Of a DNA stretch of 64,000 nucleotides, positions 3,501 to 7,740 are shown piece by piece. The stretch is from Selaginella moellendorffii (Eukaryota > Plantae > Lycopodiophyta), in contig NW_003314301.1 in NCBI RefSeq assembly GCF_000143415.4, positions 1,542,981 to 1,606,980 of the forward strand, written 5' to 3'. The position numbers and the translations under genes were made by a program. The first letter of the stretch is position 1, and each line of letters starts with the position of its first letter. The notes beneath the pieces were generated by a model, which was given only the letters and a program-made list of their open reading frames with translations, had not been told where the DNA came from and made no database searches.

Positions 3501-5717
3501 ATGTTCCGTGGGTGGATTCCGTTCTTGGACGAGCCAGTGAATCTCACTTTTGAGGTAAGCGATATAGTCTTTGCGCTGCGGGCGTGCGGCGTCACGAAGG
3601 ATTTAGAATGCGGCCGGAGAGTTCACTGCAGCTCACTAATCCAGGGCTTCTGCGGGATCGATATTTCAAATTCTCTGGTGAGGATGTATGGCCGATGTGG
3701 GAGCGTGGCCAATGCGCTAGTAATTTTCGAGAGAATGCCGAGCCACAGCACCGTCTCGTGGAACGCGTTAATACTAGCATACGTCGAGAACGGGCAAGCT
3801 GGTTTAGCTCTGGAGATTTTTTTCTCTCGTATGGAAGAAGAGTGGTGCTCGTCCAACACTTACGTTGCTGTGCTTATGGCTTGCTCTAGCTTGGTGGAAG
3901 AGAAAGAAGACGATTGCCACAAAACTAGGTGCTTGGAGGCAGCAAAGTCCATTCACTTGCAAGCTACGCAGAAATTTGAAGGGAAACTCTCGCAGGAGAT
4001 CTTCGTGGCGAACGCTTTGATGGAAACGTACGCGAAGTGTGGAAGCATGGCTGATGCTTGGGAAGTTTTCCGGGGGATGGATTCCAGGGACGTTGTGTCA
4101 TGGACGACGGTGATGCGGGGATATGTCAGGAACGGGGAAGCTCAGGTGGCTCTCGAGCTCTTCCAGAGAATGAAAGCTTGCAAGTGTGAGCCGGATTCCC
4201 GGGCTTATGTCGTGGTGCTTTCGGCTTGTGCGAGCTTGGCGGACCGAGAAGAAGGGGCTCAAGTTGGCGGTAAAACTGTGAAGCTTAAGAGCTTAGAGAA
4301 GGGGATGGAGATTCACTCGCAGCTGGAAACTGGGAACAGGGTCAAGAAGATGGAAGGCTTTGGTGGTGACTTGTTAGATTCTAGAAACCAAGAACAGGTT
4401 TTCTTATCGGGTAGCCTGGTGGATATGTACTGCAGATGCGGAGCTCTAGTGGATGCTCAGCGGGTTTTTGATAGAACTAGTCACGAGCAGCGAAACGTGG
4501 TTCTTTGGACGGCTCTCATTCAGGGATATGCCGAGAATGGTGAAAACGAGGTGGCTTTAAGATTGTTTTCGAGCATGGATGGTGTGAGAAGCTCGAGAAC
4601 TTTTCTTGCGGCTTTGACGGCTTGCGCTGGTTTAGGAGCAAAAGAGCAAGGCAGACTTGTGTCCGGCAAGGTTGTCAAGCTTTCGAGTTTGGAGAACGGG
4701 ATGGAAGTTCACGCTCGAGCTGTGGAGGCTGGAGTTTCTTCCGACTTGTTCGTGGCCAACACCTTGGTCGACATGTACTTCAAGTGTGGGAGCGTGCTGG
4801 ATGCTCGTCGCTGCTTCGACAGGTTGGTTTCTCACAGCATTGTTTCGTGGACTGCTTTAATCCTTGGCTGTGCAGAGAATGGCGAGAACGAGCTGGCCTT
4901 GGACCTGTTTAGACGTGTGAGCTGCCGAGCCAACTCTCTAACTTATGCCGCCGCTCTCACCGCCTGTGCAAACATGGGAGCACTCCAATCCGGAAGGAAG
5001 ATCCACGCGGAAGCCGAGGCTTTGGGATTCAACACCGCCGAGCTGTCCCTGGCAAACTCTCTGGTAAATCTCTACAGCAAGTGTGGCAGCATGGCTGACG
5101 CTGAGAAGATCTTTAGATCCATGACCAGAAAGGATCTAGTGACTTGGAGCTCGCTCATATCGGGATACAGCAGCAAAGGAGCAACACAAGAGGTATTTAC
5201 CTGGTTTCACAGCTTGCTGCTCGAAGGCCTAGAGCCGGATAACATCACGTATCTTTCCGTGCTTGCAGCGTGTAGCCACGCCGGGCTTGTCACCAAAGCC
5301 GGGGATTACTTCCAAGGGATGAGAGTCAAGCCAGAGATCCAGCACTATCACTGCATGATCGACGCTCTTGGACGAGCAAATCTTCTCGACGAGGCAGTAG
5401 AACTTGCCGAGAGGAGGATGCCTTGGCAAGCTACTGCGGTGACATGGACGACGATTCTAAGTTCCTGTCGAAAGTGGAAGAACGTAGCAGTGGCGAAGCT
5501 GGCTTTCAAAGCTGTGATGAGGCTGGACAGGAACGAAGGCGCGGCATACGTTCTCATGGCCAGTATGTTTGAAAGCTTGGAACTCTGGCAGGAGCAACGA
5601 AGCGTGCTGGCTATGGCTTCGGCCAGCCAAAACTTTGAAGGAAACAGGACAAAAGGTTATAAAAAATCGAAGAGCTTGATTTACTCTTCTTGTAGATTCT
5701 GTACAGCCATGGATTAA
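3501..5717 (+). CDS. PLS-class pentatricopeptide repeat protein with E domain (organellar RNA editing factor type)
   Basis: Intronless 738-aa ORF with repeated 'LVDMY.KCG...A..VF......VVSWTA.I.GY' motifs, 'VLAACSHAGLV', 'HYHCMIDALGRA' and 'AAYVLMASM'; no DYW domain. Confidence 0.95.
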   Translation: MFRGWIPFLDEPVNLTFEVSDIVFALRACGVTKDLECGRRVHCSSLIQGFCGIDISNSLVRMYGRCGSVANALVIFERMPSHSTVSWNALILAYVENGQAGLALEIFFSRMEEEWCSSNTYVAVLMACSSLVEEKEDDCHKTRCLEAAKSIHLQATQKFEGKLSQEIFVANALMETYAKCGSMADAWEVFRGMDSRDVVSWTTVMRGYVRNGEAQVALELFQRMKACKCEPDSRAYVVVLSACASLADREEGAQVGGKTVKLKSLEKGMEIHSQLETGNRVKKMEGFGGDLLDSRNQEQVFLSGSLVDMYCRCGALVDAQRVFDRTSHEQRNVVLWTALIQGYAENGENEVALRLFSSMDGVRSSRTFLAALTACAGLGAKEQGRLVSGKVVKLSSLENGMEVHARAVEAGVSSDLFVANTLVDMYFKCGSVLDARRCFDRLVSHSIVSWTALILGCAENGENELALDLFRRVSCRANSLTYAAALTACANMGALQSGRKIHAEAEALGFNTAELSLANSLVNLYSKCGSMADAEKIFRSMTRKDLVTWSSLISGYSSKGATQEVFTWFHSLLLEGLEPDNITYLSVLAACSHAGLVTKAGDYFQGMRVKPEIQHYHCMIDALGRANLLDEAVELAERRMPWQATAVTWTTILSSCRKWKNVAVAKLAFKAVMRLDRNEGAAYVLMASMFESLELWQEQRSVLAMASASQNFEGNRTKGYKKSKSLIYSSCRFCTAMD

Positions 5718-5730
5718 CAGTTGTCCATTT

Positions 5731-6782
5731 CTACTCAACATTCTCTTCTAGTTGCTTGGCGTTGAAATTCTGGCCGTAGAGACTAATGCTGCTTACAGAA
5801 GTTCTATATCTGTGTTTTAAAAACAGAAACCGTTAAATCTAGAAAATACAAAGCTTTAAGAAAAACAAAAAGATAGAAACCTGCTATTTGGCTCCGACAT
5901 ATCTTGGCTGACTCTCGTGCTGTAAGCTACGTAAACAAGCGCATTGTTGGCTTCATCATAAATCCTGCCAGGAAATAATCAACGAAAAGTAGAAAGTTTT
6001 AGAAAGTTTTAGGGGACAAAGCAAAAAGAGAAAAGCGCACCTCCGGACGTGCATTGTCTGAAACCAAACAGACCAGATTAGATTTACAGTAAAAGCAAGA
6101 AGCACAAAAATTTTACCTTGAAGAACAGGTTCCTCTTTGCACTGAACACCTCTTCCCCCTACATTGCCCGAGAAAGAAAAAAAAAACTCGAGAAAGAGTC
6201 ATGGAATTTTTTAATTTTTTTTAACCTTCAAACCGAGGGCGATTGGCGAAACCAGTCTCAGCGGGCCTGTCTGAGATGCAGAAACAGAAGCCTGTAAAAG
6301 TAATATCACTCATCGAACGAGTAGAAAAAAAACGTAGATTTTTTTTCACCTGGGAAGGATCTGTGAAGAAATCCCTTGAGAGACGCTCGGTCAGGGATCG
6401 CTTGACATTGGAGATGTGAATTGTAATGCCTTCAATCTATGGAGAAAACAAAAACAAAAAAAGCTAGGAAAGAGCGTCCCAGCCAAAGACCAAAAAGAGA
6501 AAACCTTTGGATCGGGAAGAGCAATGACTTCCACAATGTCATTGAAGAGCAATCCACTCGCCTTGAACTGCCCAATCTGCGAGAAAGCGCAAGCATCAAT
6601 CAAAACACACACACAAAAAGAGGAAAAGAGGAAAAATCCCTTGTTTCGATCCCAACCTTGGTCGCTGCCGCTGCTCCTCCCGATTCGGCGACAGCCGGTT
6701 GAAATCGATCGCCAAAAAACAAGAGAGCTGCCGCTGCTGCCCCTGCTGTTCCAACGCTCGCGAGAAACACCCTCCTTGCCAT
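5731..6782 (-). CDS. CreA-family protein (8 exons) with an RR-containing hydrophobic leader
   Basis: Exons joined by hand at GT-AG introns (~6782-6657, 6576-6505, 6436-6350, 6291-6226, 6158-6117, 6057-6041, ~5964-5881, 5809-5731) give ...DIVEVIALPDPKIEGITIHIS...DPSQASVSASQTGPL...GEEVFSAKRNLFFKTMHVRRIYDEANNALVYVAYSTR..., matching recalled bacterial CreA motifs (DPKV.GVTC, DPSDASIACRQTGP, GEEVF, RRIYD..N.LVY..YS). Confidence 0.85.
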
Positions 6783-6907
6783 AAACCCTTTCTAGGGCTT
6801 TAAACCCTTTAGAATATTCGCGAAAAACATTCGAGATTCCAGAAAATCTAACTTGTCCACTTGGCAGCATATATTTCTTACACGTGGTACTCCTTACGTG
6901 CCACTTC

Positions 6908-7423
6908 TCAGGCGGTTCCAAGAAGAATCTCACACCGCCATGGCGGTCTAAAGCCTTGATCCACTTCCAGAACGAGCAACTTATACAAGACGTAGTAGCG
7001 ATTCCATCGCATGAGCTTGCCATACGATAGCCCCTCGCAGCGCTTCTTCCACACGCAATCGTGCACAGCGCAGGTCCTCCAGCTCTTGGACACCGCCAGG
7101 CACTTGCCCACATCCACAGACGCGAGCATGGGGAAGATCTTCTCTTGCATTAGCACCGATCCTAGCGCCTGGAGTGGATCCAGGGGTCCCGGCGCTGGAA
7201 TTCTTCGCGGCCACGACCTGATCTTCTCCTCCTCGAGCGCCGCGATGTAGCGGGGACGAACGCACAGCCGCCGGCAAGGCCCACAATCGATGAGATTGCC
7301 GCTGTAGTAGAGAGTGCTCGGGCAATCGCGGGATTTCTTCTCGGAATCTAATCCAGAGCACATCGCCTTCGCAGTTGGGACTGACGATTTTCCAAAGAAT
7401 CCACAGCGCATCCCCATTTCCAT
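6908..7423 (-). CDS. Small F-box protein
   Basis: Single-exon 171-aa ORF with the F-box signature 'LMQEKIFPMLASVDVGKCLAVSKSWR......VWKKRC'. Confidence 0.75.
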   Translation of the reverse strand: MEMGMRCGFFGKSSVPTAKAMCSGLDSEKKSRDCPSTLYYSGNLIDCGPCRRLCVRPRYIAALEEEKIRSWPRRIPAPGPLDPLQALGSVLMQEKIFPMLASVDVGKCLAVSKSWRTCAVHDCVWKKRCEGLSYGKLMRWNRYYVLYKLLVLEVDQGFRPPWRCEILLGTA

Positions 7424-7535
7424 CTGAAAAACTATTTGGATGTGCGAGAAGTATGTACACTTGGCAGACCGACAACTCTGCCAGCTGGTAAGTCGGTCGT
7501 TTGTACACGTGATAGGGCTGACATGGCGCCTGTGA

Positions 7536-7590
7536 AGTCAATGTTTGACTTTTGGACAAAATGTCGTCGAATCATTGACTTAGTCAATGA
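7536..7590. promoter_or_regulatory. Cluster of four W-boxes (TTGACT) in the F-box / NB-ARC-ARM bidirectional promoter
   Basis: AGTCAA 7536-7541, TTGACT 7545-7550, TTGACT 7575-7580, AGTCAA 7582-7587. The last pair forms the palindrome TCATTGACT-T-AGTCAATGA. Confidence 0.6.
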
Positions 7591-7740
7591 AAGCACTGTT
7601 GGGAGTGTGTATAGGGTTCTTGCGATTGCGATGACCTCTCGCGCATCTCTCCCCCAATTCCAGGTAGGCCGGAATCCAGTGCCACTCCATTTTCAACGGC
7701 ATTGCACGATTGATCGCTAGCGCGCGCGCGGATCAATCAA

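What the first reader, a model, noticed from the sequence alone, without database searches (positions are those of the whole stretch)
5731..6782. Intron-rich plant nuclear homolog of bacterial CreA with a twin-arginine-like leader, invisible in the ORF track
Seen: eight small exons splice into an uninterrupted ~185-aa protein with CreA motifs. Its N-terminus, MARRVFLASVGTAGAAAAALLFFGDRFQPAVA|ES, has RR, a hydrophobic core and an AxA cleavage site, but I found no in-frame upstream stromal transit peptide. The two Cys I recall from bacterial CreA (GVTC, SIAC) are absent here (GITI, SVSAS). Established: CreA (creABCD locus) is an exported bacterial protein of unknown function. Inference: this is an anciently acquired, fully domesticated gene for an uncharacterised exported or organellar-lumen protein; I do not recall it from model angiosperms.
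Basis: partly seen in the sequence, partly recalled or inferred. Interest (0 to 1): 0.75.

Follow-up and report, generated by a model that had tools for sequence, protein, structure and literature searches.

The report
Selaginella nuclear CreA-family gene, already annotated
This is a real, expressed, eight-exon gene of the lycophyte Selaginella moellendorffii for a small bacterial-type CreA protein with a signal-like leader; public databases already list it as an uncharacterised protein, so the find is ordinary, but it belongs to an unstudied plant and algal branch of the family.

Summary
On the minus strand, eight GT-AG exons (6782-5731, including a 17-nt micro-exon) encode 190 aa. Contigs from three probable RNA-seq runs show all seven junctions. 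Each exon translation matches the database protein SELMODRAFT_419062 / LOC9660691 of Selaginella moellendorffii (P0122). P0122 scores 128.6 bits on Pfam CreA PF05981 (cutoff 25).

The leader MARR + 20 uncharged residues + AVA|ES is as quoted. An in-frame stop lies three codons upstream and no upstream exon is seen. Both bacterial Cys are replaced (I72, A100).

The protein sits in a eukaryotic clade that is sister to alphaproteobacterial CreA:
- Long algal forms carry about 50 extra residues before the hydrophobic segment, some with RR, and a rewired Cys pair. They look thylakoid-lumenal.
- Short, Cys-free forms start directly with the hydrophobic leader. These include Selaginella, Psilotum and one Chlorokybus paralog.

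RR is not conserved among the closest relatives, so a working Tat signal is unlikely. ER entry or membrane anchoring is the default reading; the true location is untested. No fold relative is solved, no seed-plant ortholog was found, and there is no literature. The gene is already annotated. Its function is unknown.

The parts
6657..6782 (-). Exon 1 (42 codons, ATG at 6782-6780): the leader plus a short Gly/Ala-rich linker.
   Evidence: Junction 6657|6576 is seen in the contigs of X1, X2 and X5.
6687..6782 (-). Signal-like leader, residues 1-32. The n-region is MARR, the h-region is 20 uncharged Ala/Gly-rich residues (V5-G24), and the c-region is DRFQPAVA with an AxA site before E33.
   Evidence: Sequence. 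The best 15-residue Kyte-Doolittle window scores 1.75. pLDDT is about 51-62 with no secondary structure in the model.
6792..6794 (-). In-frame TAG three codons upstream of the ATG. It rules out an unspliced N-terminal extension.
   Evidence: The ORF list starts this frame at 6782.
6505..6576 (-). Exon 2 (24 codons), the start of the CreA domain (IGQF...DPK).
   Evidence: It was used by reference to find P0121-P0123.
6350..6436 (-). Exon 3 (29 codons). It contains GITIH, where bacteria have the first Cys.
   Evidence: Pfam CreA E 7.5e-4, profile 27-54.
6226..6291 (-). Exon 4 (22 codons). It contains SVSASQ, where bacteria have the second Cys. The annotated isoform X2 (P0121) lacks its first 7 residues, which would start the exon at 6270.
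   Evidence: The 6270 acceptor is inferred from the sequence and was not seen in the contigs.
6117..6158 (-). Exon 5 (14 codons, GEEVFSAKRNLFFK). It is 50% identical to the E. coli CreA segment GEVVFKKRTSLVFK.
6041..6057 (-). Exon 6, a 17-nt micro-exon (TMHVR plus 2 nt of a split Arg codon).
   Evidence: The contigs of X1, X2 and X5 carry these letters between 5966 and 6117 (table 5c). X5 has one synonymous difference.
5881..5964 (-). Exon 7 (84 nt): (R)IYDEANNALVYVAYSTR..., the most conserved block of the family.
   Evidence: Pfam CreA E 4e-4, profile 97-117.
5731..5809 (-). Exon 8 (79 nt), with stop TAG at 5733-5731.
6159..6225 (-). Intron 4. It is also present unspliced in short contigs of two runs, either as a retained-intron form or as pre-mRNA. 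Reading through would stop after four extra codons.
   Evidence: table 8 (records 2 and 10, 6140-6249).
5400..5730 (-). Probable 3' UTR. It runs antisense into the end of the convergent PPR gene, whose stop at 5717 lies 13 nt from the CreA stop.
   Evidence: The X1 and X5 contigs join 5400-5809 to exons 7, 6 and 5. Contigs cannot give the strand, so two overlapping transcripts may have been merged.

Best explanation
This is the nuclear gene LOC9660691 / SELMODRAFT_419062 of Selaginella moellendorffii. It is transcribed and spliced from eight small exons into a 190-aa protein.

Shown:
- Residues about 43-178 form a CreA-family (PF05981) all-beta domain.
- Residues 1-32 are a signal-peptide-like leader: MARR, then 20 uncharged residues, then AVA|ES. 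It occupies the same position as the Sec signal peptide of bacterial periplasmic CreA.
- The protein belongs to a eukaryotic clade whose nearest prokaryotic relatives are alphaproteobacterial CreA proteins.
- That clade has two forms. A long form in green and secondary algae carries a further presequence of about 50 residues ahead of the hydrophobic segment and a Cys100-Cys171 pair. A short, mostly Cys-free form begins directly with the hydrophobic leader. Selaginella, Psilotum and one Chlorokybus paralog are short forms.

Inferred:
- The leader is the retained bacterial-type export signal.
- With no transit peptide ahead of it, it most likely works in a plant cell as an ER signal peptide or N-terminal signal anchor. 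That would place the CreA domain on the non-cytosolic side of a membrane (secretory pathway or apoplast), topologically like the bacterial periplasm.
- The RR pair is only the positive n-region, not a working Tat motif.
- The domain probably acts as a small non-enzymatic binding or scaffold module, as no catalytic family resembles it. Its ligand and role are unknown, as they are for bacterial CreA.

The confidence given (0.55) is for the whole statement including the inferred ER or anchor route. The shown parts (gene model, expression, CreA membership, clade placement) I hold at about 0.95 or more.
For: Gene structure and expression:
- Exon model.
- All seven junctions appear in contigs of three probable RNA runs, against an unspliced DNA-like contig in a fourth.
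- Every exon translation matches P0122 residue for residue. P0122 was found with exon 2 by reference.

Family membership:
- Pfam CreA gives 128.6 bits, E 1.9e-37, profile 11-130 of 131.
- Exon-level hits are colinear.
- Exons 4, 5 and 7 are 40-50% identical to E. coli CreA.

Structure:
- The AF2 model has mean pLDDT 82, with an all-beta domain at 41-174 and a low-confidence leader.

Relatives:
- 746 representative relatives were found. The top ones are Psilotum, Myrmecia, Chlorokybus, Cymbomonas, Cyanophora, Botryococcus and a diatom.
- The eukaryote clade has SH-aLRT 96-97 and is sister to a group containing a Stellaceae (alphaproteobacterial) CreA.
- Selaginella groups with Psilotum and Chlorokybus-short.

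Presequences and Cys:
- The median number of residues ahead of the hydrophobic stretch is 4 in bacteria, 6 in short forms and 53 in long forms.
- Bacteria have C72+C100 in 11 of 11. Long forms have C100+C171 in 66 of 68. Short forms have neither.
- RR is not conserved in the nearest short forms.

N-terminus:
- There is an in-frame stop three codons upstream.
- One contig ends at 6791 followed by adapter sequence, and no contig splices exon 1 to anything upstream.
Against: - No localisation predictor or experiment was available, so ER entry is only the default for an N-terminal hydrophobic leader.
- The leader is Ala/Gly-rich and moderately hydrophobic, like Tat or organellar sorting signals. 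ARRVFLA resembles the Tat core RRxFL.
- The family is found almost only in photosynthetic lineages, and the long paralogs look plastid-lumenal. This hints at a plastid-related role.
- Loss of both Cys would be unexpected in the oxidising ER and could point to a reducing compartment.
- One X2 contig runs unspliced from exon 1 into the upstream F-box gene, so the 5' end is not fixed.
- The trees are quick searches on about 136-179 columns with many unresolved forks. The careful run did not finish.
Confidence: 0.55

Rival explanations
1. The leader is a genuine lumen-type (Tat or Sec) signal and the protein ends up in the plastid: thylakoid lumen, envelope or intermembrane space. It would get there by a non-canonical route or through an unnoticed short transit function of the Ala-rich N-terminus, keeping the role of its long algal paralogs.
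For: - ARRVFLA plus a 20-residue mildly hydrophobic segment plus AxA resembles Tat signals.
- Long homologs carry clear RR + hydrophobic + AxA domains behind plastid presequences. Examples are P0147 SRRGVL, P0146 DRRGFL and P0175 SRRLLL. RR occurs in 9 of 61 long forms.
- The family is distributed almost only in plastid-bearing lineages.
Against: - RR sits at residues 3-4 with only 'MA' ahead of it.
- An in-frame stop lies upstream and no upstream exon appears in the RNA contigs.
- RR is not conserved: Psilotum has KR, and Chlorokybus-short and Myrmecia have a single R.
- The short forms lack the Cys pair that the presumed lumenal long clade keeps.
- Chlorokybus has both forms, so the two are not interchangeable.
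Confidence: 0.2
2. The N-terminus is an uncleaved anchor or bipartite sorting signal of the mitochondrion, holding the CreA domain in the intermembrane space or on an outer membrane. This would reflect the alphaproteobacterial ancestry of the gene.
For: - The nearest prokaryotic relatives are Alphaproteobacteria.
- Many short forms start with a basic N-terminus and then a Gly/Ala-rich hydrophobic segment followed by aromatic and charged residues (P0144, P0186, P0214, P0165, P0211).
- One short form comes from the non-photosynthetic Ancoracysta.
- Being Cys-free is compatible with a non-oxidising side of a membrane.
Against: - There is no amphipathic presequence ahead of the hydrophobic segment.
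- No homologs were seen in animals, fungi or other well-sampled heterotrophs among the named hits.
- The Ancoracysta sequence comes from a transcriptome and could derive from prey.
- The genome scan used a pattern taken from alphaproteobacterial sequences, so it is biased towards them.
Confidence: 0.15
3. The locus is a bacterial contaminant, or a recent horizontal transfer of no functional importance.
For: The family is overwhelmingly bacterial: 8000 candidates were scored, and the 120 listed were all enterobacterial CreA.
Against: - The gene has seven spliceosomal GT-AG introns, including a micro-exon, and they are removed in RNA.
- It lies between an intronless PPR gene and an F-box-like gene.
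- A second allele or haplotype copy exists (P0123, 97% identical).
- Orthologs exist in a fern and a streptophyte alga.
- It is only about 45% identical to the nearest bacteria.
Confidence: 0.01

Closest known systems
Escherichia coli CreA (b4397, NP_418814; first gene of creABCD), Pfam PF05981
   Same: It is in the same Pfam family and is colinear over the whole domain. It also has an N-terminal export signal directly before the domain (MKYK...LAHA|EE against MARR...AVA|ES) and is a small protein.
   Different: Identity is only about 30%. E. coli has the Cys pair, which Selaginella replaces with I72 and A100. The E. coli gene is intronless and sits next to a two-component system, whereas this one is a spliced nuclear gene between PPR and F-box genes. 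Function is unknown in both.
Alphaproteobacterial CreA-family proteins (for example the Stellaceae bacterium MAG MGA8760301.1 cluster P0131; also Geminicoccaceae, Niveispirillum, Azospirillum, Paracoccus)
   Same: These are the nearest prokaryotic relatives, 39-49% identical over the domain. They share GEE(V/I)FS, VRRIYD and LVYVAYS blocks and form the sister group in the trees.
   Different: They have classic short Sec signal peptides, keep the C72/C100 pair, carry a 'NDWTGN' insertion near the domain start, and have a shorter C-terminal loop.
Long-form algal CreA-like proteins (Chlorokybus Chrsp17S02718 P0155, Botryococcus P0143, Cymbomonas P0283, diatom Helicotheca P0142, and others)
   Same: They share the CreA domain (40-46% identical). 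They also have a hydrophobic segment ending in AxA just before the domain, some with RR.
   Different: They carry a median of 53 further residues ahead of the hydrophobic segment. In green algae this is a transit peptide; in diatoms it is a signal peptide plus a transit peptide. They have a conserved C100/C171 pair and form a separate clade. Their thylakoid-lumen location is my inference from sequence, not a tested fact.
Psilotum nudum EP00249_P004353 (P0124) and Chlorokybus Chrsp51S06547 (P0127)
   Same: These are the closest relatives: 61% identity for Psilotum and 69% over the matched stretches for Chlorokybus. They have the same short leader architecture and the same Cys-free domain, and they group with Selaginella.
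   Different: They have KR or a single R instead of RR. The Psilotum ORF call includes about 61 residues of probable 5' UTR read-through. The Chlorokybus model lacks the exon-3 segment.

Membership tests
CreA family (Pfam PF05981) | Whole-protein HMM score above the curated gathering cutoff (25 bits) | tested here: met
   P0122 is identical exon by exon to the window's gene. It scores 128.6 bits, E 1.9e-37. Exons 3 and 7 alone score 19.9 and 20.8 bits.
CreA family (Pfam PF05981) | Match covers essentially the whole domain model | tested here: met
   Profile positions 11-130 of 131 match residues 51-177.
CreA family (Pfam PF05981) | N-terminal export signal directly preceding the domain (periplasmic in bacteria) | tested here: inconclusive
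   A leader with n, h and c regions and an AxA site is present. Cleavage and export were not tested, and no SignalP- or TargetP-type tool was available.
CreA family (Pfam PF05981) | Conserved Cys pair of the bacterial members | tested here: not met
   Bacteria have C at columns equivalent to residues 72 and 100 in 11 of 11. Selaginella has I72 and A100 and no Cys at all. This is a trait of the whole short eukaryotic group. It is not required by the Pfam definition.
CreA family (Pfam PF05981) | creABCD operon context | tested here: not met
   The neighbours are an intronless PPR gene and an F-box-like ORF. Operon context does not apply to a eukaryotic nuclear gene.
Thylakoid Tat (twin-arginine) substrate | RR in a (S/T)RRxFLK-like motif before a mildly hydrophobic segment and an AxA site | tested here: met
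   A-R-R-V-F-L-A, then 20 uncharged residues, then AVA|ES.
Thylakoid Tat (twin-arginine) substrate | Stromal transit peptide ahead of the RR domain (bipartite presequence) | tested here: not met
   RR occupies residues 3-4. An in-frame TAG lies three codons upstream. No upstream splice appears in the RNA contigs, and one contig ends at 6791 followed by adapter.
Thylakoid Tat (twin-arginine) substrate | RR conserved among orthologs | tested here: not met
   Psilotum has KR. Chlorokybus-short and Myrmecia have a single R. RR occurs in only 3 of 19 short forms.
Eukaryotic ER signal peptide / signal anchor | Basic n-region, hydrophobic h-region at the extreme N-terminus, small residues at -1 and -3 | tested here: met
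   MARR, V5-G24, AVA|E33. The mean Kyte-Doolittle value of the 20-mer is about 1.9 by my hand calculation; the best 15-residue window scores 1.75. Whether SRP engages it cannot be tested here.

The most novel reading that the evidence does not exclude
Eukaryotic CreA proteins descend from one alphaproteobacterial gene taken up early in the algal lineage, which then split into two forms. One is a thylakoid-lumen form with a rewired disulfide (C100-C171) and Sec- or Tat-type lumen signals. The other is a Cys-free form with only an N-terminal leader, working in a different compartment. Seed-free vascular plants (lycophyte, fern) kept only the second form and seed plants lost it. If so, the Selaginella gene is a handle on an uncharacterised, lineage-restricted compartment protein, and the family as a whole is an unrecognised conserved thylakoid-lumen component of algae.
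Probability: 0.35. Interest if true: 0.5.

Novelty: already known. Interest (0 to 1): 0.3.

Why it matters
For this locus, little changes. The gene model, its isoforms and its CreA domain are already in NCBI and UniProt, and I add only independent confirmation from RNA contigs.

The wider value is as a lead. PF05981 has no known function, no solved structure and, in the library I searched, no literature for eukaryotes. Yet hundreds of algal and some plant lineages keep it.

The contrast between long forms (plastid-type presequences, a conserved Cys pair) and short Cys-free forms gives a testable hypothesis about two compartments. It also offers a possible new conserved lumenal protein in algae. 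The apparent loss in seed plants explains why model-plant work never met the family.

Tried and rejected
1. Scaffold alignment search. I used an alignment of E. coli CreA plus exon peptides as the query for the word-index search. MAFFT misplaced exons 2 and 3, and the result list was filled with enterobacterial CreA.

2. Search that worked. Exon 2 was searched by reference inside the stop-free mechanical ORF 6394-7113(-) using the 'region' option.

3. Joined translation. Full-length analyses used the database protein P0122 after checking it exon by exon. The only joins made in a script were the two 3-nt split codons.

4. Literature. Searches for PF05981, CreA with thylakoid lumen, CreA protein with chloroplast, and CreA family/domain/-like/homolog found nothing relevant. 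The hits were the Italian institute CREA or the unrelated fungal zinc-finger CreA. The creBC search gave no function for CreA.

5. Fold searches. None found a relative outside the CreA family:
   - Foldseek against PDB: best E 0.02, TM about 0.2.
   - VIA-align wide: best Z 4.5, below the noise level the tool states.
   - Atlas: only CreA itself.
   - PDB by profile: nothing.

6. The 'Photosystem II Psb28' name on the diatom homologs was rejected. Pfam finds only CreA in P0142.

7. Taxon labels. The look-up of encoding contigs on four unnamed homologs gave only metagenome or run accessions.

8. Careful tree. It did not finish in two 300-s runs, so only quick trees are cited.

The scan that ran used a pattern taken from alphaproteobacterial sequences, so it cannot show absence from cyanobacteria.

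10. Contamination was rejected on the evidence of introns and spliced RNA.

Full report
**Observation**

The gene lies on the minus strand. Reading 6900-5650 gives eight exons:

| Exon | Coordinates | Content |
|---|---|---|
| 1 | 6782-6657 | 42 codons |
| 2 | 6576-6505 | 24 codons |
| 3 | 6436-6350 | 29 codons |
| 4 | 6291-6226 | 22 codons |
| 5 | 6158-6117 | 14 codons |
| 6 | 6057-6041 | 17-nt micro-exon |
| 7 | 5964-5881 | 84 nt |
| 8 | 5809-5731 | 79 nt, including TAG |

All seven introns are 58-80 nt long and GT..AG. The exons sum to 573 nt, which is 190 codons plus the stop. The largest mechanical ORF over the gene is 60 aa, so it is indeed not visible in an ORF list. An in-frame TAG sits three codons upstream of the ATG (6794-6792).

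**Expression and splicing**

Twenty public runs hold part of the stretch, and most hold about a third of its words, as expected for spliced RNA. I laid four of them on 5400-7600.
- Contigs of X1, X2 and X5 show every one of the seven junctions. These runs come from three studies and carry two organism labels; the tool marks 'RNA' as a guess.
- The micro-exon is included: its letters stand between 5966 and 6117. X5 has one synonymous difference there.
- X17 holds an unspliced, DNA-like contig (5863-6602).
- No contig joins exon 1 to anything upstream. One contig (X1) ends at 6791 followed by Illumina adapter. Another (X2) runs on unspliced into the upstream F-box-like gene. The 5' end is therefore not fixed, but no transit-peptide exon is in evidence.
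- A 110-nt contig in two runs retains intron 4.

**Identity**

- Pfam CreA (PF05981) hits exon 3 (E 7.5e-4, profile 27-54) and exon 7 (E 4e-4, profile 97-117), colinearly.
- Exons 4, 5 and 7 are 40-50% identical to E. coli CreA, fetched as L001.
- A first word-index search with an E. coli scaffold returned only enterobacteria.
- Searching exon 2 by reference inside a stop-free mechanical ORF returned three Selaginella moellendorffii proteins. These are SELMODRAFT_419062 (P0122, 190 aa), LOC9660691 isoform X2 (P0121, 183 aa) and LOC9630983 isoform X1 (P0123, 192 aa, 97% identical, on another scaffold).
- Every exon translation matches P0122 at successive positions, and the two split codons both give Arg.
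- P0122 scores 128.6 bits on Pfam CreA against a cutoff of 25, covering profile positions 11-130 of 131.

The window is therefore S. moellendorffii nuclear DNA, and the gene is already annotated with its CreA domain on record.

**Relatives**

An exhaustive HMMER search of 1.84 billion representatives found 746 relatives at E <= 1e-3. The best 150 are mostly 180-330 aa long, with the CreA domain at the C-terminal end.

Named members:
- Psilotum nudum (61% identical).
- Chlorokybus atmophyticus, with two paralogs.
- Myrmecia bisecta, Botryococcus, Cymbomonas, and a pedinophyte.
- Cyanophora.
- The diatom Helicotheca.
- Ancoracysta.

No seed plant, moss or liverwort appeared among the 15 significant hits of the 90%-cluster search. 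Orthologs as similar as the Psilotum one should share enough words to be scored, so this is reasonable but not conclusive evidence of absence.

The nearest prokaryotes are alphaproteobacterial. One cluster holds a Stellaceae MAG protein. A pattern-limited genome scan gave 71 loci, nearly all Alphaproteobacteria, at 39-49% identity. That scan is biased by its pattern.

Quick ML trees show:
- One eukaryotic clade (SH-aLRT 96-97), sister to that alphaproteobacterial group.
- Selaginella grouping with Psilotum and the short Chlorokybus paralog.
- The long Chlorokybus paralog at the base of a green-algal clade that joins a well-supported (99) clade holding the diatom sequences.
- Many unresolved forks. 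The careful run did not finish.

**Two forms**

I aligned 106 sequences and compared the part before the domain.
- Bacteria have a median of 4 residues ahead of the hydrophobic stretch. These are plain signal peptides.
- The short eukaryotic group, including Selaginella, has a median of 6.
- The long group has a median of 53. Green algae show Ser/Ala/Arg-rich transit-like sequences. Diatoms show a signal peptide with an ...AF| motif plus a transit-like part. In both, a hydrophobic segment ending in AxA follows.
- In 9 of 61 long forms, RR directly precedes that segment (for example SRRGVL, DRRGFL, SRRLLL).

This is the architecture of thylakoid-lumen proteins. That is my inference from general knowledge of bipartite and tripartite presequences, and it is not tested.

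The Cys pattern follows the same split:
- Bacteria have C72+C100 (Selaginella numbering) in 11 of 11.
- Long forms have C100+C171 in 66 of 68.
- Short forms mostly have neither. Selaginella has I72, A100 and S171 and no Cys at all.

**The leader**

MARRVFLASVGTAGAAAAALLFFGDRFQPAVA|ES has a basic n-region, a 20-residue uncharged Ala/Gly-rich h-region and an AxA c-region. It sits where the bacterial signal peptide sits. ARRVFLA resembles the Tat core.

Three things argue against a working Tat signal:
- Nothing precedes the motif that could carry the protein into the stroma.
- RR is not kept in the closest relatives. Psilotum has KR; Chlorokybus-short and Myrmecia have a single R.
- The short group lacks the Cys pair that the presumed lumenal clade keeps.

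I therefore read RR as ordinary n-region charge. The default fate of such a leader in a plant cell is ER entry, either as a cleaved signal peptide or as a signal anchor. That would put the domain on the non-cytosolic side of a membrane. I put this at roughly 0.5-0.6. Plastid (about 0.2) and mitochondrial or outer-membrane anchoring (about 0.15) are live rivals. The Ala/Gly-rich leader, the photosynthetic distribution of the family and the loss of Cys all leave room for them.

**Structure and function**

- The AlphaFold2 model built on the 106-row alignment is confident for the domain (mean pLDDT 82, blocks up to 97). It shows eight strands and one short helix between residues 41 and 174.
- Foldseek against PDB gave a best E of 0.02 at TM about 0.2.
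- VIA-align against 48,161 chains gave a best Z of 4.5, within the noise level the tool describes.
- The PDB profile search found nothing.
- The Atlas shape search returned only CreA itself.
- Invariant or near-invariant residues are D64, P65, G69, F90, P93, G118, K131, R137, D140 and Y148.
- No paper in the searched library treats eukaryotic PF05981 or gives bacterial CreA a function.

The most I can commit to is a small, non-enzymatic, exported or tethered beta domain acting as a binding or scaffold module.

**Verdict**

- It is overstated on the twin-arginine signal.
- It is mistaken in treating the gene as unrecorded.
- The locus is already known. The two-form picture of the eukaryotic CreA clade is a modest, testable lead.

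The only step left out was searching the typed, joined translation.

Noticed in passing
window 3501-5717 (+) and 5400-5809: An intronless 738-aa PPR gene (Pfam PPR/PPR_2, E about 1e-61) ends 13 nt from the CreA stop, on the opposite strand. RNA-type contigs join 5400-5809 to CreA exons 7, 6 and 5. The two convergent genes therefore probably have overlapping, mutually antisense 3' ends, unless the assembler merged two transcripts.
   Followed up: partly
window 6911-7423 (-): A 171-aa ORF with an F-box-like domain (PF12937, E 4.5e-6) ends only about 125 nt upstream of the CreA ATG on the same strand. One contig (X2) covers both genes without a gap, so the upstream gene's 3' UTR and the CreA promoter or 5' UTR overlap, or there is read-through.
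   Followed up: partly
window 6159-6225 and 6270-6291: Two splice variants. Intron 4 is present unspliced in 110-nt contigs of two runs and would truncate the protein after four extra codons. The annotated isoform X2 (P0121) drops the first 7 residues of exon 4 (ASVSASQ), implying an acceptor 21 nt downstream; this was not seen in the contigs.
   Followed up: partly
P0142 / P0286 (Helicotheca tamesis) and Atlas cluster: Diatom CreA-domain proteins carry the automatic name 'Photosystem II reaction center Psb28 protein' in UniRef and in an Atlas cluster of 63 members. Pfam finds only CreA in P0142, so the name looks like a propagated mis-annotation.
   Followed up: yes
P0159 (429 aa) and P0247 (469 aa): Two homologs are fusions: an N-terminal DUF2358 domain (PF10184), then a hydrophobic segment, then CreA. 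This points to a functional link between two uncharacterised families.
   Followed up: no
one search hit names: Several Salmonella records call bacterial CreA 'Carbon catabolite repressor CreA'. That name belongs to the unrelated fungal zinc-finger CreA. It appears to be a name transfer by gene symbol.
   Followed up: no
about 14.8 kb before the window start (earlier finding s1-402744): Another first-stage note reports a Helentron relic nearby in the same genome. I did not examine it.
   Followed up: no
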